DNA from: Auanema rhodensis | Taxonomy: Eukaryota > Animalia > Nematoda | Length of the DNA: 64,000 bases | Assembly: GCA_964057225.1 (NCBI GenBank) | Contig: OZ059894.1 | Coordinates: 16,430,001-16,494,000 of the forward strand | Reading direction: 5' to 3' | Part shown: one piece after another, positions 22,801-51,035 of the stretch | Position numbering within the stretch: the stretch's first letter is position 1 | Layout of the letters: each line of letters begins with the position of its first letter | The notes under the pieces: generated by a model | Databases searched by the model: none | What the model saw: only the letters and a program-made list of their open reading frames with translations | Told to the model about the DNA's origin: nothing | Translations under genes and position numbers: made by a program

Positions 22801-23535
22801 CACAATCATCATATTTATTATTTATAATTTATATATTATATATATAATAATAAAAAGTATCATCAAATACCTTAAGAACATTAGATAAAAAAATTTATTT
22901 TAATGCATTTGTTTGGAAATGAATACAAATGCGAAAATTTGTTTTTAAACAAATAAAACTGATCATCAATACGGTACATTACAGTATAAATTGTGAAAAA
23001 AAAATTGACAAAGTCAGGCATTCAAGTTCGAAAGGCTTAGAACTTTTAAGGAATATTAGAATGATGTGAGCAATAACAGGGTACAATTAATAATAATTTG
23101 ACAAAACAAATTTTAAAAAAAGACCAAAAAACAGTGAAAAAGGAAGAAAAAAATTATAAATAAGAAGAGAAAATTGCAAAAATTGATATTATAGTTGTAT
23201 CACGAATCAGGTTAAAATTATCTATTTTTGGAATTAAAAAAAAAGAATAATTGAACTAGAAGAATTCAGGAATGTTTAAAAAAACAGAATCTAACATGAA
23301 AATCAATATTATTATTATTAGTTTAATTATAAATATAAATTTTAGTTTATAATAATAATAATAATATATTATGAATTTAATTATCATAATATAGATATAT
23401 ATATAGATATAGATATTCTTTTTTTAAAAATTTTGACAACTAGACCCATGGTAATGATGATCATCAAAGATGACAACAAAAATAAAAAGATTTTGAATGA
23501 TCATACATAGAGAAACATAGATTATATGATTTCTC

Positions 23536-26500
23536 TCATACATACCATTCTTTAAAATCTTTTTTCTTAATGACACCGCCATTTTTAGAATTTCCATTCA
23601 TCATCGATCGTCCATTTCCGTTCATTCCGTTCACACCATTCATGCCGTTCATACCATTTGGTATAACAGCTCCTTTCAATGGCTGATATCCATTTCCATT
23701 GACCTGAACAATCGAATGAATGCTTCTTCTTTAATGGAAATATTGCTTATCATACCTGTGGTTGTCTGCCTAGCAATGGTTGAGTTGATGGATCGACTCC
23801 TAACGGTGGTGAAAGATCTGGAGCTATTGCTGTATATCCTGACGGTGCTTTGACTCCATTAACAGCCTATCAAATCAAAATGTATTTGAACATCTATTAT
23901 GCATAGTAGTTATTGCTATCATAAGACTACTATCAGTTGAAACATACCATGGGATAATGGTCATTAGGAGGAGGATTCTGACGGCAGCGGAATACACAAA
24001 ATACTACAATTGCTATCAGAAGAACGACTGTTAATGATGCAATCATCACAAGAGCTGTACGAGGAAATTCCCCAGCTTCAGCAGTATTGTACTGAAAATA
24101 CGTGATTTAGCTATTGATGATAAATAGTTTTAGCATTGCAATTCGCTTATAAACCCCTTTATTTTACTTTTTTTATAATATTTATTTTTAAAATTATATA
24201 ATAAATTTATAATTATTATAATAACATATGCTAATTTACAATTTCTTTAACCCACTCCCTAATCAAAAGTTTTTCAAATTTGTACTGATATATGTTATTA
24301 ATTTTTTAATATAATATTAATATTTTATAAAGAATTAACTATATACTTTTACAAAGTATAAGTATTTTATTATTTAATAATCTTTAAAATATTTATTCAA
24401 ACTATTTACTTATTATTTCTTTCTCAAATAGCAATTGCTTAACCATCTCTTCATTTTCAATATGAAAAAGAAAGAGTAAGAGATAATAAGAGAGAGAAAG
24501 AGAGTAAAAGAGAGAAAAAGAGAGAGAGAGAGAGAGAGTAAAAGAGAGAGAAAGAGAGAGAGAGAGAGATTTGAAAATATTTTTTTTGGGAAGAAAGAGA
24601 TTGTTTTATGCTTTCTATATATATTATATATCTATGTATGTATTATAAATACTATACATATGTATATGTATATATGCTTCTAAGATGACTATTTGACAAT
24701 AACAGCCCCAAAAAACATATAATTGGAGATGCTTTTATATGATTTTTGAAATAGAAAACGGTGTAATCGTACCTTCATTGTTGTTGTGAGCAATTCGCCC
24801 ATAGGCGTCGTAGGCCTGACAGGATAAACTGTGAACGACGGAGTCGTTTTAGGCTTAGCTAGACGAGTTGTAGTTGTAGATATAAGTGTTGAAAATGTTA
24901 ATGAACTAGTAGCTTTATCTGAAAAAAAGAAAATTTAATATTAAAATAATATTATTGATTAATTGATTGATTAAATGATAAATGCTTTTGGGTGAACCAT
25001 ACACATAAAGTATTCTTAGTTATCTTCACGTACAAGCTATACACACAGATACACGTACACACTTAAAACTTAAAACTTATAAAGCAACATGAGCTCACTA
25101 AAGCTGATGAAGAGTGAGCAATAACATGCTTTTTCAAAACTTCTTTTAGTCTATTTAACTATTGAGAGAATAAATGAGGAAAAACGACAATAAGAGGATG
25201 ACTATGAACAAAAGGGAGGAGAATGGAAATTCATATAATCATCTTTAGATGAAAAAAAAAGAAAAGTTGTTTTCAACTTTTTGGCTGAATATGAAGAAAT
25301 AGCTGCAAATGGTGGAAAACCCTCTATATATCTTTCTCTTCTCACGCACAAAGAGAAGGAGAGGTAATGAGAGAGATGACGAAGCATTGAATAAGATGAA
25401 CAGAGAGAGAGAGAGAGAAAGAAATCGTTCAAAAAGTAAAATATTTGATTTATGATTCTAGTTTTAATTTGTATTTGTTTATTTATATTTATGTAAATTA
25501 GAAAGTTTGAGATTAAATATACCTTATAAGGTAAATGTTCAAAAATGATTTTCTTCTCTTTTTTTTTTGCTTATCTTGCACGTCAATACATTTCTCATGA
25601 AATATTTGAATTATTAAGTATTATTTTGTGTAAAAATGTAATGAAAAGATCTAATATCATTATTCTTTTTTTTCTTTTTTCTTCTTTTTTTTTGTCAGCA
25701 AATGTGCGAAAAAATTTTCAATAAGTAATATCATGTGCATGAAGCACATACATATGGGAAACGGTCGAGAACAAAAGTTTGAACAATTGCACTTTTCCTA
25801 ACGATATTGCCAGCAAAAAAGCAATTTAAGAGCTAAAATAGGAGAAGAAGAAGAAGATAGAAAATGAGTGAGGCGAGTAATGGTGTTGGAATCTTTGTTG
25901 GTACTCTCACAGCTGCATTGAGATCAGAATAGATGTAACATGTATTTCTATGAATATGAGGTTTGATCTCAAAACTATATTCAGAATATGTATAATATAT
26001 TCTAAAACTTTAAATTATATTAATTATATGTATATAAATAAATAAAAGAAAAAGAAAAGATAATAGTCAATGAACTATTCACTAGTTAACTCTAAGCTAA
26101 CAGGGATCTGTCTTGTTTCGCAAGCAATATTTGCCATCTGGTTAATATGGCTTCACTATTGCTTGCCAACTGATATGGCATTTCATTTACGTCTCATCAA
26201 TATTTTCTTTCACTTTGGCTTTAACAACGAATTTGGTGATAGTTTAAAAAGGATAGCTGTCGTTAAGGAGCTTAAGAAAGCCATCGGAAATCACAAAAAA
26301 AGTGTGAAGCATGCCTTGCTAAAGACAGGAAATAAAATCAATTTTTTTTGGAAAAAAAGAAATGAAATTGCTTGCAATAAGAAATAGTTCTTAAACTCTT
26401 GATGTTGTGGTGGTCTTACTACCCCATGTGCTCAAGCTTCAAGTTTAAATCAAGGCTTAGTTGAAGCAATCATGCGGTGAGTTCACGAATATATACTACA

Positions 26501-29500
26501 TGGTTCATTGCAATTTTAAAAGAAATGCGGAAAAAAGAGAAATGCAGAATCAGAATACTGGAAGCAGAATGAAAAGACAACCATAAAAATGAACAAAATA
26601 ATGTTATTTAGTTGACATCAAAATAGAAACACAAATTGAAACTTTGCATGATGTTGTCTTTGCTCAAACTGCCTAGATGCTCGATGTGTTAGCATTGTAG
26701 CCAAGCGTCAAAAGTCTGACCAATAAGCCAAACCAGATGGCATAAGCAGGAGCACGAGGATAAACGAGTAGAGACTTTGGTTCAGGACAGCTCTAGCGTT
26801 TGGAAGAGGCAGATGAGCTAGAGGCTAAACGGAAGCAGAACCCAGCATGCATAGCACTGCCAGAGGTCTTTGCTCTCTCTATCCTTCTCTCTCTTCCTTT
26901 CTATAAATCCTTTCAATGTTCTCTTTCTCTCTATATGTCCCTATATTTTCTTTTTCTACCTCTTGCTCTTCTTCTCTCTTTGAATCTCTGGGTGACAAGC
27001 AGAATGAGGACGATGCTAATTAATAGAAGAAATATTGGTTCTGAAGGCTGAAGCACTTTCTGCCAATTCTCATTAAATAAACGGACCAGCAGCACCCAAC
27101 TGATTGTGTGTCATGTTATTTTAAAAAATAATAAATTTCAAGTACAAGGCATATACCTTGATATCCAAAAGAAAAAACATGCGAAAGCGCGTTGGCCTTT
27201 CATTCTATTGAGCAACTTTCGTTATAAATTTTGCCAAATAAAGTTTTAAATGTAAAACTTGGCGTGGAGTCAATGCGTTAAGTACGGAAATTATAACATC
27301 TTGTTCAATTTTATATATTCTGCTTCAAAATCAATAAAATTCGATATGCAAATTTGTCAAAAGAAAAGTTGGAATAAAGTAGTGTGTTGCTAAAAAAAAA
27401 AGCTTAGAAACTATTTTTATGAAAAATTGATATGATCAGAAAAGAATAATTCTCTTATTCTATGACTAATTTTAAAAATTTAATTAGAAAGATATGATTA
27501 GAATAATGAGAATAGTGAGAATATTTACGTGAAACGTGATTATATTATTCACGTGTAATCGAAAAAAATAATATTATTTTAATTTTCATTGAATAAGAGA
27601 ACGGTTGTTTTAATTTTTTTTTAAAAACTTATATTGATTATATATATAGTATACTATACTATATATATAATTGTTAAAAGAAAAGGAAATATTCAACTTC
27701 TTATACATATAATATGATTAGGCAGCTGATATTGAATACATTTCGATATCTAGCTAAACTACTGCTTAATGGAAAAATCAATTTGATTATGAGTTTTAAT
27801 GAGTTGGCAGCACCACGCAAAGTTTGAGTTTATAGGGGAAAAAGTTGGAGAAAAAGAAGTAAATGAAAGGAAAAGAAAGACAAAAGTTGAGATGAAAAGA
27901 ATGTTATGAATGAATGAGTTAATAAACTATCAAATATAATGTTACTAAAAAAGATTAAACTATATATTATTTATAATAATAATAATAATAATAATAATAA
28001 AATCAAACTATGAAAGGATTAGATAGTAGTTTAACGGTGCATACAACAAAAAAAATTTTTTGTTGCTCCGCTACTTCATTCAAAAATGCATAAGCTACTA
28101 GATCTCCGATGAAAGACGGAGAGATTGCTTATTAAGAACAGAACTTAAACGACACAGCAGACTGCCAAACAGGAAAAGCCCTATTCACACAAAATGTCAG
28201 ACAAGGTAGTCATATGGGCCAGATGAACCACAGTTTGACGACTTATAATTGGTGATCGATGGTGCTGAAGCATTTGATTGGCTGTGTGCTCTCTCTTTCT
28301 CTCTCTCCCTAGGAGGTAGCTGGGCTGGCTCTGAACTTTTACGTCTTTCTGCCATATTTCACGCCGCCAATGCCCTCAGATTATACTTGAATTGCAAAAG
28401 ATTACATTAGGAATTTTCCTTTTTTTCCTGATTACTTGTAAGTTCACAGAATGCAGGGAAAGAGGATTTGTAAAAGATTGATCCAAAAGAAGAGGAGATC
28501 AAGAAACATTTCAATTGCCTATATGACAGTATAACAAAAAAAAAGGATTGAACAAGGAAGTTAAAATTGAAGAATCTTCAAATTATCAAAATAATGATAC
28601 TGAATTGAGTTTTGAGGGAAGCACACACGATGGCAGTTGGCCAAAATAAAGTTTTGTTGTTGATAAAAGGTTGATTATAAGCATGCCAAGCATATTACAT
28701 ATGTTTGTAAACTGAAATTCAAATTTGACATGAACGTTATGGTAAAACCGGACAGGACAGACACAGCAAGACTTGAAATACAGACTTAATACTTGGAAAA
28801 ACACATTTTAGATGGTCTTCATACGTATTAAATGAACAAATAGAACAGTTCTGATAGATGAATCAAGATAGAGGAGCTTGGCAACGACAGGTCGACTGAT
28901 GACGACTCGACACACAGCAAACAAAACACCGCTAAACGGATAACACAGTTATAGTAAATCCTGTATAGCACTAGACGTTCAGACCTGAACACTCGACGGA
29001 ATCAGAAAAGCAACAGAAAACTGGGTAAGCTCAGAGGGTACTGGAAGAAACTCGTAAGGATGCTTCAAAATAATACAAGCAATAAGAGGTTAAACCCAGG
29101 AAGCAAGCATCACACGCAGAATAAAGAAGATATATACCAACCCGTGAGACTTTTGAACGGCGACATCTTCGTTTGACTAGCAGTTGTTGTTGCTGGCACA
29201 CTAGTTGTCGTAGTCTTCCGTCGATGATGTACTGACGTAGTTGACACAGTGGTTGTGATTGGTCTAGGCACCATTTGAGTTGTTCGACTGCCAGTAAGCG
29301 AACTGTTCTTGCTCGGACGCCAAGCAGGTCCAGTTACCATTGGCTCCGGAAGCAAGTCTATGTCGGCCCATATACTGTCGCCTAGATATTCAGGATTCTG
29401 TTCAGCTGCAGCACTAACACTTTCATATGGTCTTGGTAAAACTGTGACACGTGTAGATGCTCTGGTAGTTTGGATGTTAGGAGAAACTGTGCTGTTTTTA

Positions 29501-32500
29501 GACGTCGGGCGCCCGACGGGTGCGTGATGGCCCGGAAGCCGTGCGTCTGATCCGAGTTGCGACACGTGTTGCCGCGAATCTGAACCCGGTCGAGCATGTG
29601 GAGCCTGAGGCGCGATGGGATGTGGTGGCATCACAGTGGGGAGAGATTTCGGTGCCGTGGTGCGTCTGGCTTGAGTGGCTGCAGTTGTCGAAAGTGGCGA
29701 CAAAGTTGAATCTATATCGGATGCTTCTGTGCCTTCGATAGAGGAGAGATATATAATAGAAGGAGGAGTTAAAGGTGAAGAGCTACTAGTAGTGGAATAA
29801 GAAGAAGATTTAAAATCAGAAGAACTATAAGAAGGTGGTGGGACTGGTCGTGAGACGACGGAAGTTCGGGTAGAATCTGCAGACTTTCTAGGAGACTCAC
29901 CACGAACTGCAGAGGATGGTGGATTATTAGTAGTAGCACGTCGAGGAGCAGTAACCGCGGACGGAATCACTGGAATGAAGAAGCCTGCAAGAAAATAGAT
30001 TAGATGTTTTTGTCAAAGTTGAAAGAAAATATTTTAATATTTTTTCTCTTTTTAGCTTTTTGTTCGAAAAAAGAATGCATCATCATGTATTTTTCAGGAT
30101 GTATCGAACCGGAATCAGAATAATCTTCGTGAGACTGATAATCTTCTTGGCTGCTCCCGTGGAACGACATCGAATTCATACGATTTCGAGTAGCATCCAA
30201 ACGACTCGAATCGAAATTTGGAGCAAATCGTGGAGGTGGCGGAGCATTCAGACGACATTTTGGAGAGTTCCAATCCATCAAACAGAGGATTGGTAACACT
30301 GTGCTTGTCATCACAATCATCCATAGGGGCGGGTCCTGTGTATTTACATGACATAATCAAACAGATCATATTCTCATTAAGAGAAAGAAGTACGTGTTGA
30401 ATAATTCTATTTGGAACAATGAACATGAAACATTGGCATTTGGTTAACACAGAGAGCAAAGAGAAAGGATCAAATTTCTAATAGTTTGAGTTCAAATTGG
30501 AAGGTGGTTAGTAGATAGCAATATAGCCTTCAGAAATCTCATCTATCAAGTTTCGGGATGGAAAGAAATAAAAAAATAGAAAAAAGGCTCAACAAAAGGA
30601 ATAAACTGAACATGGATACATGAATATACAGCATGTATATGATCATATGAGGAAAATTGGGGTTAGATGAGCAATTTGAAGACATCGACTACATAGATAC
30701 TACTATTACTTACAATACATCGAAAGGATATTATAAGGTTTTATAAGAAAGAGGAAATGACCTTCATTTCAAGCAAAAACAAGGTATAGTATAGAAAATT
30801 TTCTAAACATATACATATATATATATATATATATATATTTTACTATGTTTCGATATAATATATTATAAAAGAATAATATTAAGTAAAGGGTTGGAAACGA
30901 GGTAATAGCAGAGTTTGAGATTGCTGATTTTGAAAAAAAAAAGAATAATCTTTTCATACAAAAATTGTTTATATGTAAACATAATATACTAATATATACT
31001 ATATAGTTTAAAAAAAAGGAAAAAATAACATCAGCTTGAAAAAAAAGTAAAATAGGAATAGATCAATGAGTATTGCAAGAAAATAATCTGAGAATGTGAG
31101 AAAAGCACATATTGCCTTGTTTCTTTCATTATATTGGAAAGAGTCAAAGAAAATGAAAGATATTTGGAGGGATGAAAGTTGAAAGTTGCTTATGAGTAGA
31201 TATTTGAAAATTATATGGAAAAATGAATAAAATTTGGAATAACGAAGACACAAAAATGAAGATGATGGCATGGCTTGTGACTGAGAAGAGCAATATTTCA
31301 AAAAGTTTTTAGATGAAATTAATTAGAATTACAATTAAAATAATAATTGAAACTTCTTTACATGAGTTTCTCGAAGAAACAATAGATATGAACAAGAGTT
31401 CGTTAAGTTGCCAAATAAAAAAAATATAATTAAAATGGAAAAGTAAGTGAAAGGATAAGAAAATCAGAGATGACTATGTTAATTAGATATGCACTAATAT
31501 AATTCCTTTCTGCCATCAAAGTTTTAAAAAGTTTTGAAAATAAGGAAAAAGAGAAGAAGGATAGATGTATTCCAAACAATTTCTGGAAACGAATTCTCAA
31601 GGAAAACAAGGAAGAGGTTTCAGATGTGAAACATGCTCTCTGGTGAAAGAAGGAAAAAAGAAAAAGAGAAAACATGAAGAATGACGAATAACTTGGTAAA
31701 TGAAGTACAAAGTTGATACTTTATCAACTAAACTTAAAGCTTGCGCTAGTTGTGCTCCATGATGAACGTTATGGTATTGGAGAGAGAGGGGAAGAACAAT
31801 AGATGAGCATTAGACTAATCATGACTTATATAAGATTTTCATAGTTAAAGAGTGCGAATATAAATATGACTATAGTTAACTATGTGCTTCTCTTGAGAAT
31901 GAATGAAAATAGAGAGGGGAAGAGAGAAAAAGAGACAAATAGAGAGAGAGAGAGAGAGAAAGAGAGGGAGAGAATAGGTCTTAAGGCCTTTATAGGAAGT
32001 GAGCTCTTCACAGTTATGCAAGGTTATGAATCCAGATGGCGCAACTGTTTGATTTTCAGTTCTTCATCTATTCTATCTCTTCCTATTCTCATGGCCTCTT
32101 AGCTGTAGAGATATCAAGGAAACGGCTCATCCCTCCCTCTCCCCCATCTTCGTCATCAACTAAAATACACGAAGGACAAAGCAAGTGTCGATAGCTAGCA
32201 AGCATGTGCTGACCAAAAGGGTTGTCTCACACTCTATTCCTTGATGTACGCCCCAGCTTGCTACTATCGACTTCCAGATTCTTAGCAAATTCAATCATTC
32301 CGACGACAAAACAATTTTTGAGCTCACGATGGCAGGAAAGACGACCAAATACTTTTTCTTAGTATAACGTATATATCAAGAGCTCAGATTATATATATAT
32401 ATAGTATATAACATATAGATAGATGTATGGATCAAGGTTATTTCGTAAACGAACAGTATGACACGTTCAGTCAAGCTGTTGCTTTTGAAAAACAAGTTTC

Positions 32501-35500: not shown

Positions 35501-38500
35501 AACTGGAATGCAACTGCTTTGTGTGTCGTAATGATCAGAATTAAAAACATCTTCTTTCATAGAACATCTTAACATCCTTCAATGAAAGAAGAAATGATTT
35601 TGCTCAATCGAGTTACGATTAAGAAAAGCTTTTTATGGAGGAACATGACAACACAGGTGGCTTACACTGGATAAAGTAGTTGTGAATGCTAAGATGACAA
35701 CAAAACCTTTTGCACATGTGAGATAAAACCAACAAATTTCTATTCTGGACACTTGAAATAATAGCAGTGAAAGAGCTTCTCCTCAATTATTTGTCAGAAG
35801 GTCAGTGGAGCAGAAGAAGATGGTCATTGAAATAATACCTGAATAGTGTATTATCCTTCAAAACTCGTTACTTTCTTCAATCATTACTACTGCTTAACTA
35901 TGGAAAATATAGTAAGTGAAGCCATATAGAACAACACCATTGGCTTCAAAGCCAACCAGGCCCGTGTAAATCATAAAAAGTTTAATCAGTTGGATGCTAT
36001 TGATAAAATAAAATTTTCTAGAATGTCGTCTAAAACTTCCCAATATTATCTTGAATGAGAGCAAATCTCATGTGTATTTATCCAAATTCGATAATTTTTT
36101 CGACAATTTGCAGCATATCTATATCAAAAAGACTCAATTTAGTACTAATTCTAGAAAAACTTGTATTGTAAAGGACATTTAACTATATATTAAACATAAC
36201 AAAAAATATTAAAAATATAATAATAAATTCTCAATAGAATTATAATATTCAAATTAACTTATAAGTATATAGTTAAATATAATTTATTAATATATAGTTA
36301 ATTGGAGTTAAAATTTTAAAATATAATGATAATCAAAACAAATAATTTTATGAAGAAGACAAGAAAAAAGAAAATTTTTTTTCTTCAATTTTTGTCATAT
36401 TGTTTTATGATATTCAACTGATCATAAACCAACAACTTCTCACGCACAATATCTCAAAATGAAATAAAATTATTTAAAATGTGAAGGATAAGTGAGACGG
36501 GGCTAGTAAGATATACAAGAAGTTCAAGAAATTATGCCCCAGAGATGGTACCACATGTGACAAGTGGTCAGTTCATGAATAATGTTTTTAAGAAAGCTAT
36601 TTTAAAAATTGTTTTTAGTGATGTTCAAAAAACATATTTAAGTAGTTAGCTCATAAGAAAATCAGAAAAAAATAAAGTTCCTAAATTCTTCTTTAATAAC
36701 TAAATTGTATTCACATTGTATTATGTGTATATAAGATTCAGTCAAAAGCATGCACATAGCGTAACTATAGGTGAAATTACAAATTCAAGAATCTAATCTG
36801 AAAATATTAATATTTGAATTTGGAAGCATAGATTATGAGCAATGATGCATGTTGCTTTCCTCCAAAAAAACCAAAAGAAATATAATTATCACAGTTGCAT
36901 AGCTACTCTCAAAGTTTGTTAGAATCCACTCAAAATTCAGGAATTGCAACATTGCAGCATAAAAACTAATAGGACAAGATATATTTTGTTTCGAAGCCGA
37001 AGAAAGAAATAATAAAAAGTCAAAGAATATGAAATCAACTTCCGATTGATAAGTTGATGTGTATGCATATAATAGATTTGCTATCAAAAATAGTTTTAGT
37101 AATATACTCAATATCATTCGATTCGATGATTTCTAATACAATGATGACACCTTTTCTTTTTTGTTTTTATTTATTGTTTTATATATTAATAGATAAAAAT
37201 AACATTTTTTCATATCAAAACTAACCTGAATGTTCCGTTTCAACATAGCAACTATCATGTTCTTCTACTGTTAAGCAAGCGGCACCGAGCGACTCTATTA
37301 GGGCGTCAGCAGAATTCTGAAAAAAAAACAATTATTATTATTATATTATGATATAATAAATAATTTGTTCTCAGGTAATAGTAATTTGTTGCAGTAAAAT
37401 GCATTTAAAAGTTTTATAATATTGAAAGAATATATAGAATATGTCAGACGGATATTTTTGAATAAAAGTAAAAGCAAACAAATAACTGCAGAAATTTAAT
37501 ATTTCAAAATCACATAATGCGAGAAAAGAAAAAAAAATAGAAGCAAAAGTTGAGGTGACGACTTCACAGCCATACTGAAAGTGGCCACAAAAGCTGGATA
37601 GCCTCTATGGAATTGCTATCATTCAACACGAAAAGGCAATAGAGCACAACAAAACTTGACATTTATCAAGATAAAAATGTTGAAAATCTGATTTGAAACG
37701 AAGATTTTTACCAATGTGACGAAAAAAAATTTTTTGGTCTTCCTCTACTTTTCTTTGTTTTAATATTTAGCTGTACTTTACATCTTTTATGAATTTGAAG
37801 AGAAATTGTTAATGATTTCGAAACTCATTTCATATTCGGAATATGGAAGGTACAGAGTTCGAGAAGAAAAACAAAAAATATTTTCGATTTAGCTTTCAAA
37901 TTAATTTCTTCAAGATAAAAAAACAATGAGCTTACGTCCATTCCTTCCTGCATCATTTCTTCACTTGGCTGCTCAACAGGAGGAGATTCGTGAACTTTCT
38001 TAACAGATCCAATAGCAAATACACGTGGCGATCCTAAATAATTAAATATAACTATATTAATTATATTATCATATTAATATATAATAATAAAATCAAATGT
38101 TCAAGAAAAATAGGGGAAAATGGATTATGAGGACATTAACAATACTTTAGTTTCCAGATTAAAGTAAATGATCAAACATCTTTTCATGAATGAGAGGTAT
38201 AATTTACGTAATATAGAAAATCATGACGATAATAATATGATGAAGCTTATTATATTTAACATTTGAATATGCTATACATAATATTATTATTATTATTATT
38301 ATTTTAACATACATGACATATAATTTAGATATATATTTATATATATATATAGGCATATTGAATATTATATAAAATGATTATGATAATCAATAAAGTAAGC
38401 TATATGATTTAAACAATTTTGATTCGTAAATTATAATATTATATTGCACTAACTATATTATACTTTATCATCAAAAGAAGAAATAAAAGTTATATAGCAT

Positions 38501-44500: not shown

Positions 44501-47500
44501 CATACAAATCCAAAATTGGCAATCCATTAAAGTTGATTCCAGAAATCTCTCCGTGAAAAGGGTCATATAGACGAATATCATTACTTCGAGTATATCTGAA
44601 TGATTGATAAAGCTTATCAATAAACACTATTATATACCGAGTTTGATCAGTTTTCTGTAGATGAAGAGTATTCATAGATGATCCAATGAGTAATCTCCAA
44701 TGCATATTTAACGTTGTCAATTCAATACCTTCTAAAAATATTCACATAATTAAAATATTAAATATAATTAAACCTTTAGGTGCATATCGAACTGGACTAG
44801 AATTATCTAATTGAAGAGTTACATTGTATTCATAACGGAATAATTTAACAGTATGTAGTTTCCCATCATTGACAGTTTTCGATAAAACACCAAAATGATG
44901 TTGACCACTTCCGAGATCAAATCTCAGATGTAGTATTCCTTCATCCTGTAATTAATAGAATATGATTTGATTGATATTAAAAGAAAGTTTCAAACAATAT
45001 AAAGTGTGAAGAAATCGGGTTCTGCCGATGATTCAACAGAAAACAATACTCCTGATAATTCTTTTGTACTGAATGCTATAACCATGAAGTCTTTAGATGT
45101 GCTTGGCATTTCTCCGGGTGGATACTCATAGTAGATACCAGATGCTTCCCCATTGAAGGAAAATGTGGTTGCAGCTTCAAAAAGCAGTTTAGTTACATTT
45201 CGAAAATAAAACAGAATTACGTTGACTGCATTTTGGTCCAGCATATCCGGATAGAGTGCAATCACAAAATATGTTGGTCCATCGTTGTATACATCGACCA
45301 CCATTCGAACAAGCAAAAGGTGAGCATCGTGATACAGGTCCTAAACAATCTCAATTACATAATGCTAAGCAGAAGTGTATAATATTGCAGTTCTAAACAA
45401 CATTCAATGATATTAGATGCATTGAGACAAGTGATAGTGAGGAAAAAAGCAGTGAAATTACAGCCAAGAAAAAGAATAAGAAAAAATTTCGGAGAATTGC
45501 AGAAGTAGTAATATAGAGCATAACTTGTATACATATATATTATATATACATATTTAGTTATACTCGTGAATATAGATATACATTTATAAATCTACATTAT
45601 ATCTAGTTTACCTATAGTTTTATAATTATGTCTTAGATGATGACTAGCTGTAAAAGAAGTAATTTCCTCATTCAGAAGGAAATATTATAAATATTATAGT
45701 TGAAAGATAGCATATTTTGATTCAAAAATATATGTATATGTATGTATATGAATTACCGTTGCAACCCTTTGCGATACTATGCATTGAATTAGCTTCTTCC
45801 ATTATATCTATCAAACGATCATTCAGACGCAAAGTTGAAATACAACCACGAAAACCAGTAGCTGACAGAGCACCATGAGCAGCTAAAGATGGCGGAATGC
45901 CTCCTATAATAAATAATATAAATATATATTCACATAATTTAGCTGAGACCTAAAACAGCTGGACCAGTTGGAACAAATATGGAGCTTGCAGCAGTGTTAT
46001 TCATAGGAATCGATGATGTTGTGTTATCAATAAGAAGCACATGTTCCATAGTATCAGGATTCTACAGCAACTTAAGTTTTAAAAAAGCATAAAATGTTGT
46101 TATTTACCTGATATACAAGTACAGTATGCCATCTCATGTCACTTAGATGTTGCTTATTTGAAAGTCTTGGAGATGTAATTGAACCTTCAGTTTTACCAAA
46201 TCGAAAAGAGTATCGAACTCTAGAAACAGAATGACACTATCATGATTGAAATTATGCAAACCTGGCATTAACTAGTTGGATTGTCATGAAGTTAGGTGAA
46301 TTAACTGGCAAATATGCAAATAGTAAAGACATTCTAACAAGAGTTTGAAATTTAAATGAAACCCGAAAATGACCCGTTAGTGAAGATATCTGAATCAAAA
46401 TAATAATTATGTGTATATAAATTATTATAAAATACTTTATCTGAACTAAAAGAAACGAAACCCGTTGAGTTTGTGAATGAAACCGACAATTGTTTTGATT
46501 TTCTGAAAGAAGCAAATACTTTTAAAATTATTAAAACCTGAAAACTACATGTTTCGAAGTCCCTTATTCTCTTTACTCGATTTTCCTTCTTTTCGAATTT
46601 TATTCAATAAATCGATGCTATTAAAATTCTGAAAAAAAGGAAAAACTATATTGAAAATACATATGGAGGTGATTTTACTAATTGACTAATATGCCCTTTA
46701 AAAGGTGATTGAATACGATCATCAGGTTTGAACGATCGTGCTCCAACGACTTCATCTATTTCTATTACAAGTGAAGAATTTAAGGTATCTGAATATATAT
46801 ATATTGAATATACTAATTAACATTGAACATTCATACAGCTGCTTCCCCATTTTCCATCAAAGTGCAACAGCATATGATTTCCTCGTCTTTTAACTTTGGC
46901 TGTATGCCATTTATTATCTGTAACTAGTTCTCCCCACATATGAACCTATAATCAATTTTATATATTATTTATAATATATTAACATACAGTTTTAGATGTA
47001 GATGTTTGTAATACAATATGTAGCATTCCATCTAATATGAATACAGATAGGAAATTTGAAGGATGTGCATTCGAACGAGTTTCGAGAAGACAGCCACGCA
47101 TTTGGTCGGTCTGATAAACAATTAGATAATTTCATTACAAACAAAAACTTTAATATTAACTTACTTTGAATCGAACTTCAATATTTTCAGCTTCAGACAT
47201 GGTAGATCGTGGGTATATGAACAGCATATTTTGTTCTCCGTCAATTGAATAAAACACCGGATCTGATTCGAAAAGTATTTAGGTTGAAACATATATGACA
47301 GATATACCAGCATTACAAGTTGGTCCAACCATGCTTGTTTGGGTACAATCACATTTGAAGGATAATGTTCCAGAAACGCATTTTCCATAGTTATGACATG
47401 GATTAGGTGAACAGTTATCCTTTCGTGTTGGACATCCCAGAGAAACACCTATTCAAGTTTGTAACAACAAAAGCTTCTAAAGCTTACCTGTTGTATTAGA

Positions 47501-50500
47501 ACTTTCAAAAGCTGATGCGATCTTGGCACTAATTCCATTAAGACGAACATTCTTGATACAACCAATAAAAGACTATAAATAGAATAATTATATTTTTCTC
47601 TTAACGTTTAACAATTACTTTTCGTAAAGATATGGACCAAATTGATGAAGGATATATGAAATTGGACGGAGGTAAGCCACCAATCAAGAGTGGATCAACT
47701 ATATTTAGTATTCATTAATTTATGTTAATAATGATACGAATAACTCACCAACATCCAAATTTGCTGATGTTCCAGGAGTATTGAAATCAGTCTTATGACT
47801 ATTTACAATAATCTTTCCTTGTCTTCTTATTCGTTCCATATAAACAAAATTCCAATCATTTGTATCAGTCAAACGTTTGAATGTAGTTTGTAAACGTATT
47901 GATCCTGCTCCAAGATCTATTATCATGTACAGATGACCATCAATCAGTTCAAAAGCTAAATACTCGGAAGAATTGTCAATCATTGAGCTTAATAAAAATA
48001 TTAAGCCATCAGGCTCAGTTGAACGAAAATGGAAAGCTGTAAAAAAAGATATTTATTATATCTTTCATAAAGTATAACTAACATATACTTCCACCTTTAG
48101 CATCACCTGTCCATTTAGGTAACACGAGAGGGCTTGAGCCTGAATGAAACGATAATACATCGGCTGGTTGTGCAGGATTTTTGCATGAAAAAGATAAATC
48201 TCCTCCTAAATAAGAATAAAAATATAAATACTATATAGGTAATATACCTGTTCTTATAATGCTATCACCATAACCTTCATCAGCCAAGCTTACAAAGTTT
48301 ATGCGTAAAGAATCAGCAGCATATTGAACCTGTTAACTATAATTAGTCAATTGTAAACAAACTATAACTAACCATCTTCAAACATCCTCTAAATGGAACC
48401 CTATTTACATTTTTGATATCATTATCCTTTGGAATTCCCCCAACATATACGAATGAATTATAAATCCAATCCATTTCAGGAGCATACTGTCGAATTTGAT
48501 CTTTCTGGTCATCGACTCGTAGTCTCATCTAGAACAAATGATATTCTTCCGTCAAACAACAAACCCAGAAGCCAGAACATCATATTTTCAATCATCATAT
48601 CAGAATATCATGCACTTTGAACACAGGGATGAAAACCAATAAAGGAAAAAAAACAAAATGAAAGCTGGAGAAAAAGCGTTAAGCCACACCCTCCACCGTA
48701 TTCGAAACGTGAAACGATGGACCGTTAGTAAGTAATAGGAGAAGCGAAGAACTGATTGAAACAAAAAAAAGGAGGAGAGGAAATTCAATGCAATGGGTCA
48801 TAACTTACATGAACTGCTGCTGTCTTTTCAGAATGCTAAAGAAGGTAACATGGTTAGAATACAACAACAACAAGCAGAGGGAAAAAACGTTAGAGCTTTA
48901 GAATGAGTTATTAAAGTTGAATAACATTCTTTTATAGGAACTATGCTATAAATTATAATGCAATATAATTATAATATTATTTATGTGATTACTGATTAGG
49001 AAATCACAAATATAATTAATATATGTTTATAAAAGTTATTAGAACTATTGATTTTAAACTCACAATTTGTAGAGTCCTCTCCAATGTTACTGTATGCCAT
49101 GTATCGTCATCATAACGTTCTGCTGGAAATTTATTGAAAAGCCGGATTATTCTAACATCTGTTCCTTCGAGTTTTGAAGCAGCTATCATAGCTCCATTTT
49201 CTAATGTTAATAGAAAATAACTCTTAAAATATAATTTGGTAATTCGGAAATAATTTTTTCATTATTTCAACCTTTTCGTCTCCGGCAAAGAATATAATAG
49301 CTGTTCCATGAACAGTTTTGAATGATAACGTGATATTCTCAGATTTAGTTCGAATAATCGCTGATATGTTTTTTGAAACATCGTATCCAATCCATTCTTG
49401 GCCACTGAATGTCAGCTCAGCATCAGTTTTTTCTTAATATGATAAATAAATAATAATTAAGACTAGATATCGTTACCTATATCACAGAATTTTCCTTCGT
49501 GATCACTGTTAGAACAATCACATTGTGGCCCTTCATTAGTTGAGAAACACGTTCCAAAATTTTGACATTCAAATACTTCTCTTGATGATACCTAAAATAC
49601 AATAACATTATAATTTAATAATTAAATTGAATAATCGTACGCCTGAAGGACGACAATAGTTGTCATCTGTATGCCTGATTCCTTGTCCATCGATGAGCTG
49701 CGGTGATGTTTCGCCTAAACAAAAGTTAAGATAATCACAACCGCTGCTGGTAGATTTGAAATTAAAAATGAAATGTAAAAAACACATAGTAAATCGCGTA
49801 ATTCATTAGCATATTACGTTAATTATAAATATAATTATGAAAGTACCAATAATCAATATTATAATACTACTATATTAGCATATAATTAAACAAATTATAT
49901 TCTTTACCTTGAGGATATAATCTATATACTAGATTACGAATATTTGCAGCTAAATGTATGGAAAAACGACGTAAGGGTGATGATAATCGGGGAAGAAGAT
50001 GTATATCCTATAAATATCAAGTATATCTTTAAATAGAATTATTTTATAATCAAAAAACATACAGCTGGAATACCGCCAACAAATACATCAGAATTCTTAT
50101 GAATATTTCCAAAAACAAAACTACGTTGGTTGAGAATTTTAAAAACTAGCGTAAAATCTAGTTCTAGTTTTACATTTTCGAAACTCTGAAATAGGTTCTA
50201 AGTGAATTTCAAATTTATTTTAACTTATAAGACCTGATGCAGTCTTAACGTGTGCCACCTATCATCATCAACTCTGATTTCATCTATTCGAATAGTTGTA
50301 ACTGGACGTTGGTGCCGGAAGTCATTTGAGTTGTCTCCCAACCTAAAGATCAAATGTTATCTATCAAAAAATCATGAAAATAATACCTAAAATCGAGCTG
50401 AATATGCCCATCATTTATCGAAATAGCATAGAAATTTCCATTCACCCCACTGTCATCAGTGTATAGAATAAGTCCATTTGATTGTCGAGTTTTGAGCTCT

Positions 50501-51035
50501 AGTGACAGAGAATTTTCGTATGAATGTGCCCACTTGGGATACCTAGAACAAAAAAGTTTCAAAAGAGTAACACCATGAACTCATCCATATTTTAAGTTTT
50601 GTTCGGCTCAAAGTTCGATATGCTGTTAGCATGACCAGATAAAAGAGTCCGCCTTCATATATCTTTTTATATTTGAGATAATATAGTATGTACTTTACAT
50701 CATTTTCAGTTTTAAAATATATAACCATCAGAATGTTCAAGAATGAACGTTCAGAAGTTTTTTTTTGTTTAATGACTGACGTGAGAGTTCAAAACGAAAG
50801 AACTTAGAAAATCAGAAATTCGCTTTGCATAACTTAAATTTTCTCCTTTCTATAGAATCTACGTCAAAATCTCAAAGTTCATTAAGCGTTTGATGGACGA
50901 AAAAATAATGAGCCGAGAGACACACCTAGCATACGAATCGGGAGCTCCAGACAAGATTATTGATGTGGCCAAATGGAATTGTAAAAAGAAAAAAACTATG
51001 GTGAATAGGCCAGGATCAAATATATTGTGAAGCAT
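23536..51035 (-). CDS. nrx-1: alpha-neurexin (signal peptide, 6 LNS/laminin-G, 3 EGF, Cys-loop, S/T-rich stalk, TM, PDZ-binding tail)
   Basis: 37 phase-compatible exons: 50926-51035, 50387-50542, 50234-50342, 50063-50185, 49908-50007, 49641-49714, 49477-49591, 49272-49432, 49064-49222, 48373-48528, 48248-48329, 48083-48205, 47749-48036, 47619-47698, 47488-47572, 47308-47448, 47165-47262, 46988-47110, 46837-46945, 46679-46788, 46549-46628, 46436-46502, 46262-46389, 46108-46219, 45950-46061, 45757-45903, 45221-45340, 44996-45174, 44774-44945, 44495-44731, 37936-38033, 37226-37316, 29142-29984, 24773-24918, 23948-24091, 23756-23866, 23536-23703 (sum 5457 nt). Starts MLHNIFDPGLFTIVFFFLQFHLATSIILSGAPDSYARYPKWAHSYENSLSLELKTRQ; TM ALVMIASLTVVLLIAIVVFCVF; ends KKKDFKEWYV*, the nematode neurexin PDZ ligand. 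Confidence 0.96.
24489..24569. repeat. interrupted (AG)n microsatellite in nrx-1 intron
   Basis: AG runs broken by repeated gtaaaa and aaa. Confidence 0.9.
25833..25912 (-). CDS. nrx-1: candidate alternative terminal exon of nrx-1 encoding a GPI-signal-like hydrophobic C-terminus
   Basis: caatgcag|CT GTG AGA GTA CCA ACA AAG ATT CCA ACA CCA TTA CTC GCC TCA CTC ATT TTC TAT CTT CTT CTT CTT CTC CTA TTT TAG = (A)VRVPTKIPTPLLASLIFYLLLLLLF*; phase 1 matches the upstream stalk donors. Confidence 0.45.
27974..27999. repeat. (AAT)n microsatellite
   Basis: direct reading. Confidence 0.85.
30110..30335 (-). CDS. nrx-1: alternative second Cys-loop exon of nrx-1 (gamma-type or mutually exclusive)
   Basis: tacacag|GAC CCG CCC CTA TGG...GAT TCC G|gttcga; DPPLWMIVMTSTVLPILCLMDWNSPKCRLNAPPPP...EDYSDS(G); phase 0-1, joins GFFIPVIP in frame; GC level like coding exons. 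Confidence 0.7.
33377..33405. repeat. (ATAG)n microsatellite
   Basis: direct reading. Confidence 0.9.
37040..37117 (-). CDS. nrx-1: candidate signal-peptide first exon for a short (gamma-type) neurexin isoform
   Basis: MILSILLKLFLIANLLYAYTSTYQSE|gttgat, phase 0 donor, preceded by a tattag acceptor about 15 nt upstream of the ATG. Confidence 0.4.
45612..45647 (-). CDS. nrx-1: candidate 36-nt alternative microexon of nrx-1 at LNS5-EGF3 hinge (ASHHLRHNYKTI), SS6-equivalent position
   Basis: cttttacag|CTAGTCATCATCTAAGACATAATTATAAAACTATAG|gtaaac; phase 1-1 matching flanking exons; no stop. Confidence 0.6.
48809..48835 (-). CDS. nrx-1: candidate 27-nt alternative microexon of nrx-1 in LNS2 (HSEKTAAVH), SS2-equivalent position
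   Basis: ttctttag|CATTCTGAAAAGACAGCAGCAGTTCAT|gtaagtt; phase 0-0 matching flanking exons; no stop. Confidence 0.75.

What the first reader, a model, noticed from the sequence alone, without database searches (positions are those of the whole stretch)
23536..51035. Hidden vertebrate-like neurexin splice code in a nematode: enlarged introns mark cryptic alternative exons
Seen: most introns in the LNS/EGF region are 39-55 nt, too small to hide anything. Two of the few enlarged ones (48529-49063, 45341-45756) each contain a frame-preserving microexon with strong splice sites. The multi-kb juxtamembrane introns contain a second Cys-loop exon, a signal-peptide exon, an alternative stalk donor and a hydrophobic terminal exon. 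Known: vertebrate neurexins diversify ligand binding through SS1-SS6, and C. elegans has alpha and gamma nrx-1 promoters. Inference: this one gene could combinatorially make alpha/gamma, +/-SS2, +/-SS6, short/long stalk and TM/GPI/secreted forms, while the introns near the SS1, SS3 and SS4 positions (44, 42, 42 nt) cannot hold inserts.
Basis: partly seen in the sequence, partly recalled or inferred. Interest (0 to 1): 0.85.

Follow-up and report, generated by a model that had tools for sequence, protein, structure and literature searches.

The report
Nematode neurexin gene's alternative exons
This is the neurexin (nrx-1) gene of an Auanema-like roundworm: three of six proposed hidden splice options hold up, chiefly a 27-base mini-exon kept across roundworms that sits exactly where vertebrate neurexins have splice site 2.

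Summary
The window carries nrx-1 (alpha/gamma-neurexin) on the minus strand, 51035-23536. The closest relative found is Auanema sp. JU1783.

Supported:
- The 27-nt microexon 48835-48809 (HSEKTAAVH). RNA contigs skip it in two runs and one contig includes it. It is a 27-nt AG..GT unit in six other nematodes from clades I, III, IV and V. It sits at the vertebrate SS2 insertion point.
- The "second Cys-loop exon" (30335-30110). It is the first coding exon of the short gamma isoform, homologous to the N-terminus of the C. elegans short NRX-1, not an internal alternative exon.
- The internal stalk donor after 29901. It is conserved and matches the UNC-75-regulated cassette exon 24 of C. elegans nrx-1. 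RNA support is indirect.

Not supported:
- The 36-nt "SS6" exon: skipped in all four runs, not conserved beyond the sister species.
- The signal-peptide exon at 37573: ATG and frame lost in the sister species.
- The GPI-like terminal exon: chance level, not conserved.

The large juxtamembrane introns otherwise hold conserved islands that look non-coding. The verdict is partly supported. Several relatives' annotated proteins already include the microexon, so novelty is modest.

The parts
   Evidence: tblastn of Auanema sp. JU1783 NRX-1 (P0001) covers 49585-23539 in order. Spliced RNA contigs cover it. Open frames.
48529..49063 (-). 535-nt phase-0 intron inside LNS2, at the vertebrate SS2 position
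   Evidence: Contigs X1 rec3 and X2 rec5 join 48528 to 49064. Sequence. Alignments to PDB neurexin-1 LNS2 and to vertebrate sequences carrying the SS2 insert.
48809..48835 (-). 27-nt cassette microexon encoding HSEKTAAVH
   Evidence: X4 rec13 carries 27 letters lying in 48750-48949, joined to 49064 (inferred from the depth arithmetic). Identical peptide in L001 with 3 synonymous changes. 27-nt AG..GT counterparts in L002, L003, L004 and L006. Included in annotated proteins P0165, P0161, P0172, P0162 and P0170. Splice score ranks first, P=0.038.
48609..48614 (-). Single UGCAUG (Fox-1/ASD-1-type motif) in the intron half downstream of the microexon
   Evidence: One copy each, downstream of the microexon, in the window, L001 and L002. 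A regulatory role is inferred only.
48661..48695 (-). Conserved intronic block (GGAGGGTGTGGCTT...GCTTTTTCTCCAGCTTT) downstream of the microexon
   Evidence: Alignment with L001. No hit in L002-L004 or L006.
45341..45756 (-). 416-nt phase-1 intron at the LNS5-EGF3 junction
   Evidence: Removed whole in contigs of all four runs. The homologous intron is 345, 256 and 257 nt in L001, L002 and L004.
45612..45647 (-). 36-nt candidate microexon (ASHHLRHNYKTI); unsupported
   Evidence: Good splice scores, P=0.026. L001 keeps AG, GT, the length and an open frame, but the peptide differs (AIILTDPDSNEI). Depth is zero in four RNA runs. No counterpart in L002 or L004. No annotated nematode protein has an insert there.
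37936..38033 (-). Exon after LNS6 (SPRVFAIGSVKKVHESPPVEQPSEEMMQEGMD), phase 1 to 0
   Evidence: The 30-letter loose end of contigs X1, X2 and X4 at 44494 maps uniquely to 38003-38032. P0001 alignment.
37603..37697 (-). Conserved non-coding block in the intron upstream of exon B
   Evidence: 82% identity to L001 with 16- and 26-nt perfect runs. No conserved frame.
37514..37573 (-). Proposed signal-peptide exon (MAVKSSPQLLLLFFFLFSHY); rejected
   Evidence: In L001 the ATG is lost and the stretch has non-3n indels and stops.
37226..37316 (-). Cys-loop exon B (NSADALIESLGAACLTVEEHDSCYVETEHS-G), the alpha-form exon, phase 0 to 1
   Evidence: Used in P0001 and in C. elegans, C. briggsae and S. ratti proteins. 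16 of 20 differences to L001 are at third codon positions. The lengths of contigs X2 rec4 and X4 rec11 fit B.
30110..30335 (-). Exon A: first coding exon of the gamma (short) isoform, ATG at 30320, encoding MIVMTSTVLPILCLMDWNSPKCRLNAPPPPRFAPNFD...; an AG lies 15 nt upstream of the ATG
   Evidence: Homologous to the N-terminus of the C. elegans short NRX-1 P0176 and M. belari P0182. 80% identity to C. auriculariae and recognisable in S. ratti. 12 synonymous and 1 non-synonymous codon change against L001. X4 rec11 ends 29 nt into the stalk exon.
29142..29984 (-). Mucin-like stalk exon (281 codons), phase 1 to 1
   Evidence: P0001 alignment and best-scoring exon model.
29895..29900 (-). Internal alternative 5' donor GTGAGT after exon base 84 (29901). 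Its use would drop 759 nt (253 aa) of stalk.
   Evidence: Identical in L001. G|GTAGGT at the same position and phase in C. auriculariae. X2 rec4 ends exactly at 29901, since 468 = 94+101+98+91+84. C. elegans precedent: nrx-1 exon 24 cassette (PMC3627589) and short-stalk proteins P0168 and P0176.
25833..25912 (-). Proposed GPI-like terminal ORF (AVRVPTKIPTPLLASLIFYLLLLLLF*); rejected
   Evidence: Acceptor score 3.2, below the median of real sites. It is one of 22 similar ORFs in three introns. No similarity to L001.
24773..24918 (-). Pre-transmembrane exon (DKATSSLTF...PVRPTTPMGELLTTTMK)
   Evidence: 92% identity to P0001.
23948..24091 (-). Transmembrane exon
   Evidence: P0001-guided model.
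23536..23866 (-). Two cytoplasmic exons (23866-23756 and 23703-23539) plus the stop; PDZ-binding end KEWYV

Best explanation
This is the single nrx-1 neurexin gene of an Auanema-like rhabditid nematode. It makes isoforms in the three ways that nematode nrx-1 genes share.

(1) A 27-nt, phase-0 cassette microexon lies in the enlarged LNS2 intron.
- Skipping gives ...TLERTLQI|MRLRVDD...
- Inclusion inserts HSEKTAAVH at the very point where vertebrate neurexins insert SS2A.
- By homology and by a model of a relative's domain, the first four residues form a turn and the rest lengthens the next beta-strand at the ligand-binding rim of LNS2. This should change which partners LNS2 binds (inferred).
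- Inclusion looks sample-dependent.
- It may be driven by a Fox-1/ASD-1-type UGCAUG site in the downstream half of the intron (inferred).

(2) An internal promoter in the 7.2-kb intron drives the short gamma isoform.
- Its first coding exon (30335-30110, ATG 30320) carries its own Cys-loop motif.
- It splices to the shared stalk exon.
- The AG 15 nt upstream of the ATG is probably a trans-splice acceptor (inferred).

(3) A conserved GTGAGT donor lies 84 nt into the stalk exon.
- It can splice to the pre-transmembrane exon and remove 253 aa of mucin-like stalk.
- This is the counterpart of the UNC-75-regulated cassette exon 24 of C. elegans.

The 36-nt 'SS6' exon, the signal-peptide exon and the GPI-like terminal exon are most likely chance ORFs. 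Apart from the gamma first exon, the conserved stretches seen in the multi-kb introns look non-coding.
For: Microexon:
- Spliced contigs skip it in X1 and X2. X4 rec13 joins 27 letters lying in 48750-48949 to 49064. The depth 0.96 equals 27 x 7.1 / 200.
- The L001 copy differs by 3 synonymous changes, inside an otherwise poorly conserved intron.
- 27-nt AG..GTAAGT counterparts are found in C. auriculariae, S. ratti, A. viteae and Trichuris suis.
- Annotated proteins of C. briggsae, C. angaria, M. belari and two Pristionchus species include a 9-residue insert there.
- The insertion column is the same as vertebrate SS2.
- An AlphaFold2 model of M. belari LNS2 with the insert has pLDDT 84, shows a turn plus strand extension, and best matches 6PNQ, the SS2A-containing LNS2. 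Wilson et al. 2019 report that SS2A extends beta9.

Gamma exon: plus the end of contig X4 rec11 29 nt into the stalk exon.

Stalk donor: plus X2 rec4 ending exactly at 29901.

Rejections.
Against: - The row placing the 27 letters of X4 rec13 was not printed, so its coordinates are inferred from depth arithmetic.
- Contigs cannot quantify inclusion and they drop rare forms. Absence of the 36-nt exon is therefore not proof.
- Use of the stalk donor and of the gamma exon in this species rests on where contigs end. That reasoning assumes the behaviour of a k=31 assembly graph.
- The length of X1 rec1 fits either stalk form.
- The 36-nt candidate has good splice sites, and its length and frame are kept in the sister species.
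- One Pristionchus fissidentatus model (P0160) places an exon-A-like segment inside an alpha protein.
- No ligand or regulator was tested.
Confidence: 0.8

Rival explanations
1. All six options (alpha/gamma, SS2, SS6, short/long stalk, signal-peptide exon, GPI or secreted end) are used.
For: All six features exist in the sequence. Both microexon candidates rank first in their introns. The sister species keeps the length and frame of the 36-nt unit.
Against: - The signal-peptide ORF is destroyed in L001.
- The GPI-like ORF is at chance level and not conserved.
- The 36-nt exon is absent from four RNA runs and from about 15 annotated nematode proteins where that junction could be read.
Confidence: 0.04
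2. The 36-nt unit at 45647-45612 is a genuine cassette, but it is specific to the Auanema lineage and rarely or cell-type-specifically included at the LNS5-EGF3 hinge.
For: It is the only frame-preserving candidate in its intron. Its splice score is 13.1 and shuffles reach that in 2.6% of trials. L001 keeps AG, GT, 36 nt and an open frame. The intron stays enlarged in other nematodes.
Against: Depth is zero inside the intron in all four runs. The peptide is not conserved, the splice scores in L001 are weak, and there is no counterpart in L002 or L004.
Confidence: 0.15
3. Exon A is also an internal exon of alpha transcripts, mutually exclusive with exon B. Alpha forms would then come with either Cys-loop.
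For: Both exons run from phase 0 to phase 1 and follow a phase-0 exon. The 15 nt before the ATG are open in frame in the window and in L001. The P. fissidentatus protein P0160 joins exon-B-like sequence to exon-A-like sequence, while P0162 and P0170 carry B only.
Against: In C. auriculariae the stretch upstream of the ATG is in another frame, so alpha-to-A splicing would not be coding there. C. elegans and M. belari proteins start at this exon. Contig lengths fit exon B in the alpha contigs.
Confidence: 0.2
4. The contig ends are assembly accidents. In this species the stalk is always long, and the GTGAGT is kept only because it encodes Gly-Glu-Ser.
For: No junction read was seen directly. X1 rec1 can be read as a long-stalk transcript with a 121-nt 3' UTR.
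Against: The donor is kept at the same phase in C. auriculariae with a different amino acid (G-R-S). X2 rec4 ends on the exact base. Short-stalk isoforms exist in C. elegans and M. belari.
Confidence: 0.2

Closest known systems
Vertebrate neurexin splice site 2 (SS2A insert HSGIGHAM in LNS2; PDB 6PNQ against 6PNP)
   Same: - Same insertion column: RNLRQ|VTISVDG against RTLQI|MRLRVDD.
- A small alternative insert: 8 residues in vertebrates against a 9-residue, 27-nt phase-0 exon here (the vertebrate exon structure was not examined).
- Both inserts begin with His-Ser.
- In both, the modelled or solved insert is a loop followed by an extension of the next beta-strand.
   Different: - 27 nt against 24 (+21) nt.
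- No similarity beyond His-Ser.
- The insert-dependent vertebrate ligand neurexophilin is absent from invertebrates (PMC12665717), so the nematode partner is unknown.
- Common descent against convergence is unresolved. Drosophila encodes a 9-10-residue extra stretch there as part of the upstream exon. The annelid Owenia has a 5.6-kb intron at the site with no recognisable counterpart.
C. elegans NRX-1 short isoform (gamma, formerly 'beta'; P0176, 287 aa)
   Same: It starts in a dedicated exon carrying ...PILCLM(D/N)W....C...(R/K)FA.NFD and joins the shared exon at GFF.PV. It has no LNS or EGF domains.
   Different: The window's exon has a shorter, more hydrophobic N-terminus (MIVMTSTVLPILCLM). 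It lies 7 kb from exon B rather than a few hundred bases as in Caenorhabditis.
C. elegans nrx-1 exon 24, a 528-nt UNC-75/CELF-activated cassette (Kuroyanagi et al. 2013, PMC3627589)
   Same: It removes or adds the long Ser/Thr/Pro-rich stalk segment at the same place, about 26 residues after GFF. The length is a multiple of 3.
   Different: Here, and in C. auriculariae, no intron separates the two parts. The choice is therefore an internal alternative 5' donor rather than a cassette. UNC-75 dependence was not tested.
Honeybee neurexin I alternative splicing (Biswas et al. 2008, PMC2570956)
   Same: It is an invertebrate neurexin with multiple alternative sites. Introns coincide with human SS2 and SS4.
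   Different: The bee variants are mostly exon or domain deletions and alternative 3' ends. No SS2-position microexon was reported there.

Membership tests
alpha-neurexin (NRX-1 orthologue) | Six LNS and three EGF domains in the order LNS-EGF-LNS, three times over | tested here: met
   Collinear tblastn with Auanema NRX-1 P0001 (EGF1 to the C-terminus). Laminin_G Pfam hits on P0001. LNS1 exons seen in the window. PDB hits to neurexin-1 alpha for LNS2 and LNS6.
alpha-neurexin (NRX-1 orthologue) | [quoted passage not shown] | tested here: met
   ...ALVMIASLTVVLLIAIVVFCVF... and ...KKDFKEWYV*.
SS2-type alternative insert of neurexin LNS2 | Insert lies between the strand ending ...R.L.. and the strand ..VD(G/D), 10 residues after the conserved WH | tested here: met
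   MAFFT alignment with bird neurexin-2 sequences that carry the insert. Ungapped HMMER alignment to 3R05, 3QCW and 6PNP.
SS2-type alternative insert of neurexin LNS2 | Both the inclusion and the skipping forms are expressed | tested here: met
   Skipping contigs in X1 and X2. One inclusion contig in X4, with coordinates inferred from depth. Relatives have annotated proteins with and without the insert.
SS2-type alternative insert of neurexin LNS2 | Insert sequence homologous to vertebrate SS2A | tested here: inconclusive
   Only the initial His-Ser is shared. Lengths are 9 against 8 residues. Inserts in clades I and IV do not even keep the His.
SS2-type alternative insert of neurexin LNS2 | Insert changes ligand binding (dystroglycan, neurexophilin) | not testable with these tools
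   Only a structural analogy is available.
gamma-neurexin | N-terminus encoded by its own exon downstream of LNS6, homologous to the known short isoform | tested here: met
   Exon A against P0176 and P0182. Purifying selection.
gamma-neurexin | Independent transcript start or promoter | tested here: inconclusive
   Only indirect evidence: a conserved AG 15-16 nt upstream of the ATG in three species, and contig X4 rec11 breaking 29 nt into the stalk exon.
Stalk cassette (C. elegans nrx-1 exon 24 type) | In-frame removable Ser/Thr/Pro-rich segment at the same position | tested here: met
   759 nt between the donor after 29901 and 29142. Position compared with P0168 and P0176.
Stalk cassette (C. 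elegans nrx-1 exon 24 type) | Alternative use in RNA; UNC-75 dependence | tested here: inconclusive
   X2 rec4 ends exactly at the donor. No junction was seen. UNC-75 dependence cannot be tested here.
SS6-type insert (LNS5-EGF3 hinge) | Included in transcripts and conserved among relatives | tested here: not met
   Zero depth in four runs. No counterpart in L002 or L004. No insert in annotated nematode proteins. The position of vertebrate SS6 is from memory and was not verified in the papers read.
GPI-anchored or secreted neurexin variant (SS5 type) | Alternative terminal exon with a hydrophobic tail that is conserved or expressed | tested here: not met
   The ORF is at chance level. No similarity in L001. 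No reads could be laid on it because the reads call was already used.

The most novel reading that the evidence does not exclude
The alternative microexon at SS2 is ancestral. A small regulated insert at this intron would already have existed in the bilaterian ancestor, kept in nematodes (27 nt) and vertebrates (24 + 21 nt) and fixed into the upstream exon in insects. It would be under Fox-1/RBFOX-type control. Part of the neurexin 'splice code' would then predate vertebrates and could be dissected genetically in C. elegans.
Probability: 0.3. Interest if true: 0.75.

Novelty: new member of a known kind. Interest (0 to 1): 0.5.

Why it matters
Reviews state that extensive neurexin alternative splicing is exclusive to vertebrates (PMC12665717; PMC3229692).

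A 27-nt exon kept for the whole depth of the nematode phylum, at the exact SS2 insertion point, shows that at least this site is regulated outside vertebrates.

This gives a genetically tractable route to ask what an SS2-type insert does when neurexophilins are absent. One can delete or force the exon in C. elegans.

There is also a practical lesson for annotation. Four of the five nematode gene models whose loci I fetched omit the microexon, and the fifth (T. suis) also lacks an insert in the protein alignment. One model lacks LNS1. One splits the gamma unit off as a separate gene.

Most of this is already implicit in public protein predictions of other nematodes. I found no paper that describes it.

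Tried and rejected
- Exon-sized PDB searches were too short to be informative.
- Two ab initio dynamic-programming gene models skipped or invented exons. I used them only where RNA or P0001 agreed.
- Loci for C. elegans P0168, M. belari P0172 and Trichinella P0068 are not on record. I therefore could not check the C. elegans genome or its isoform list for the microexon.
- Rfam found nothing in 23000-52000.
- The conserved intronic islands gave no hit in the Caenorhabditis, Strongyloides, filarial or Trichuris loci.
- Paper searches for nrx-1 together with microexon found nothing. A hit for neurexin together with microexon was only a reference to Neurexin IV.
- The length of X1 rec1 cannot tell a long stalk from a short one: a 121-nt or an 880-nt 3' UTR are both plausible.
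- The 5.6-kb Owenia intron has 76 open AG..GT units and no recognisable counterpart.
- The other enlarged ectodomain introns (50862-50543 and 49870-49747) hold no good candidate.

Full report
**What the region is.**
- Open frames on the minus strand run from an N-terminal hydrophobic start at 51035 to ...KKDFKEWYV and a stop at 23536.
- An exhaustive HMMER search with the LNS3 exon found a 93%-identical protein, P0001. This is the predicted NRX-1 of Auanema sp. JU1783.
- P0001 aligns collinearly from 49585 to 23539.
- The four sequencing runs that hold the stretch are RNA, because their contigs lack the introns.
- The window is therefore the nrx-1 gene of a close Auanema relative.

**Check of the observation.**
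- Sixteen introns shown by contig joints are 39-54 nt long.
- The two enlarged introns have exactly the stated borders: 49063-48529 (535 nt, phase 0) and 45756-45341 (416 nt, phase 1).
- I built splice-site weight matrices from 21 introns of this gene. With them, the 27-nt unit 48835-48809 and the 36-nt unit 45647-45612 each rank first among frame-preserving AG..GT units in their intron.
- Shuffled introns reach their scores in 3.8% and 2.6% of trials.
- The two other enlarged ectodomain introns hold nothing comparable.

**The 27-nt microexon is real.**

RNA:
- Contigs X1 rec3 and X2 rec5 join 48528 directly to 49064.
- Contig X4 rec13 (200 nt) has 162 letters on 49064-49225, preceded by 27 letters that lie in the bin 48750-48949.
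- The depth of that bin, 0.96, equals 27 x 7.1 / 200.
- The row with the coordinates was not printed. The 27-nt AG..GT unit is the obvious place, but this step is an inference.

Conservation:
- In Auanema JU1783 the unit differs by three substitutions, all synonymous. Both splice sites are identical, while the surrounding intron is poorly alignable.
- The homologous intron of four further nematodes holds a 27-nt AG..GTAAGT unit at or near the top of the splice ranking:
  - Caenorhabditis auriculariae: HSEKMSAVH
  - Strongyloides ratti: NSMATTTVI
  - Acanthocheilonema viteae: RTASVASVH
  - Trichuris suis: LQAGILTAT
- The annotated proteins of those four loci and of Auanema JU1783 lack the insert.
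- Predicted proteins of five other species include a 9-residue insert at this point:
  - C. briggsae: HSEEMVAIH
  - C. angaria: HSEEMMAIH
  - Mesorhabditis belari: HSEKVSAIH
  - Two Pristionchus species: HTDRISAVH

**It sits at SS2.**
- In a multiple alignment, the bird neurexin-2 insert HAGIGHAMVNKLHYL falls in the same column, 10 residues after the conserved Trp-His.
- HMMER aligns the nematode LNS2 without gaps to neurexin-1 alpha structures across RNLRQ|VTISVDG. 6PNQ and 6PNP differ there by 8 residues.
- I modelled M. belari LNS2 with its insert using AlphaFold2 (pLDDT 84). Residues 1-4 of the insert form a turn and residues 5-9 prolong the next strand.
- The best structural match of that model is 6PNQ, the SS2A-containing LNS2.
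- Wilson et al. describe the same geometry: the first four insert residues are disordered and beta9 is extended.
- Whether the two inserts share ancestry is open:
  - Drosophila grimshawi encodes an extra EISSITSFCR as part of the upstream exon, with the intron right after it.
  - The annelid Owenia has a 5.6-kb intron at the site with no recognisable counterpart.

**Possible regulation (inferred).**
- A single UGCAUG lies in the downstream half of the intron in the window, in Auanema JU1783 and in C. auriculariae.
- A 35-nt block at 48695-48661 is also conserved with Auanema JU1783.

**The 36-nt "SS6" unit.**
- Contigs of all four runs remove the intron whole. Depth inside it is zero.
- Auanema JU1783 keeps AG, GT, 36 nt and an open frame, but the peptide is unrelated and the splice scores are weaker.
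- C. auriculariae and A. viteae have no counterpart.
- None of the about 15 annotated nematode neurexins where the ...GC.G|P..RC... junction could be read has an insert there.
- Contigs drop rare forms, so I leave about 15% for a lineage-specific, rarely used exon.

**The juxtamembrane region.**
- The loose end of the contigs after the LNS6 exon maps uniquely to 38032. This defines an exon 38033-37936 that ends in phase 0.
- Exon B (37316-37226) follows in P0001. It is conserved in Caenorhabditis and Strongyloides.
- Exon A (30335-30110) is even better conserved. Against Auanema JU1783 it shows 14 differences in 141 nt, 12 of them at third codon positions, giving 12 synonymous and 1 non-synonymous codon change.
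- Exon A is 80% identical at the protein level in C. auriculariae.
- The C. elegans short isoform P0176 ("NRX-1 beta isoform", 287 aa) and an M. belari 329-aa protein begin with exactly this sequence and then join GFF.PV.
- Exon A is therefore the gamma first exon, with its ATG at 30320.
- Upstream of the ATG the frame is not kept in C. auriculariae, but an AG lies 15-16 nt upstream in all three species. This fits a trans-splice acceptor.
- The proposed signal-peptide exon at 37573 loses its ATG and its frame in Auanema JU1783.

**The stalk.**
- The donor G|GTGAGT, 84 nt into the stalk exon, is identical in Auanema JU1783. In C. auriculariae it is G|GTAGGT at the same position and phase.
- In C. 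elegans the corresponding segment is cassette exon 24 (528 nt), activated by UNC-75 (PMC3627589). Short-stalk proteins are on record there.
- Contig X2 rec4 extends 468 letters beyond 44774. That equals 94+101+98+91+84, so it stops on the last base before this donor.
- Contig X4 rec11 extends 413 letters, which equals 384+29. This is the break expected in a 31-mer graph if a second exon ending in ...CG (exon A) also joins the stalk exon.
- These are precise coincidences, but they are not junction reads.

**The GPI-like ORF.**
- Its acceptor is weak.
- 22 similar AG-started ORFs with hydrophobic tails occur in three introns of this T-rich strand.
- Nothing aligns to it in Auanema JU1783.

**What else the big introns hold.**
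- Eleven islands are 70-91% identical to Auanema JU1783.
- They have no conserved frame, carry indels that are not multiples of three, and contain TAATTA-type motifs.
- They gave no Rfam match and are not detectable in more distant species.
- They look like cis-regulatory elements.

**Literature.**
- Reviews state that extensive neurexin splicing is exclusive to vertebrates.
- The honeybee study noted that SS2 and SS4 coincide with introns.
- I found no paper describing a nematode SS2-position microexon.
- It is nonetheless implicit in public protein predictions.

**Verdict.** This is an ordinary nrx-1 orthologue. Its real isoform options are shared with other nematodes. One feature is under-appreciated: a phylum-wide microexon at the SS2 position.

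Noticed in passing
window 44161-44033, 42482-42424, 41306-41220, 39946-39697, 39175-39014, 35846-35774, 33651-33567, 32968-32902, 32329-32165, 28210-28067: Islands 70-82% identical to Auanema JU1783 inside the multi-kb nrx-1 introns. They have no conserved reading frame, and some carry TAATTA-like motifs. They are probably neuronal enhancers.
   Followed up: partly
window 27083-27006 (minus strand): A 78-nt island 91% identical to L001. All five substitutions fall at one codon position of an open frame (RLFNENWQKVLQPSEPIF), yet no usable AG/GT borders exist and a 1-nt indel follows. It could be coding or chance periodicity.
   Followed up: partly
window 30477-30003 (minus strand): Two overlapping open frames of 120 and 118 codons cover the gamma first exon. 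Only the CLMDW frame shows synonymous-type divergence. The stretch CCGCCYCTATGGA upstream of the ATG is conserved at nucleotide level between Auanema and Caenorhabditis, in different frames.
   Followed up: partly
window 24460-24640 and 31896-31978: CT/GA-rich low-complexity repeats that match many places in the Auanema JU1783 locus.
   Followed up: no
L002 (C. auriculariae) 22682-24571: The public annotation splits nrx-1. The gamma first exon and the stalk are called as a separate gene downstream of the alpha part. The Auanema JU1783 model P0001 lacks LNS1, although homologous exons lie upstream in L001 (8750-9679).
   Followed up: partly
L006 (Trichuris suis), intron after ...RTLSQ: The microexon has two tandem donors 9 nt apart (GTAAGTACG|GTAAAT). 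This would allow 27-nt or 36-nt versions.
   Followed up: no
P0016/P0189 (Ptychodera flava) and P0007/P0192 (Holothuria transcripts): Isoform pairs of invertebrate deuterostome neurexins differ by 7- and 17-residue acidic inserts between EGF1 and LNS2, which is the SS1 position. Ptychodera has a further 7-residue difference in LNS4.
   Followed up: no
window 44350-50349, runs X1-X4: X4 assembles only the microexon-inclusion junction (contig depth 7.1), while X1 and X2 assemble only the skipping junction. The X3 contig breaks exactly at 48528. Inclusion may differ between the samples, for example by stage or sex.
   Followed up: no
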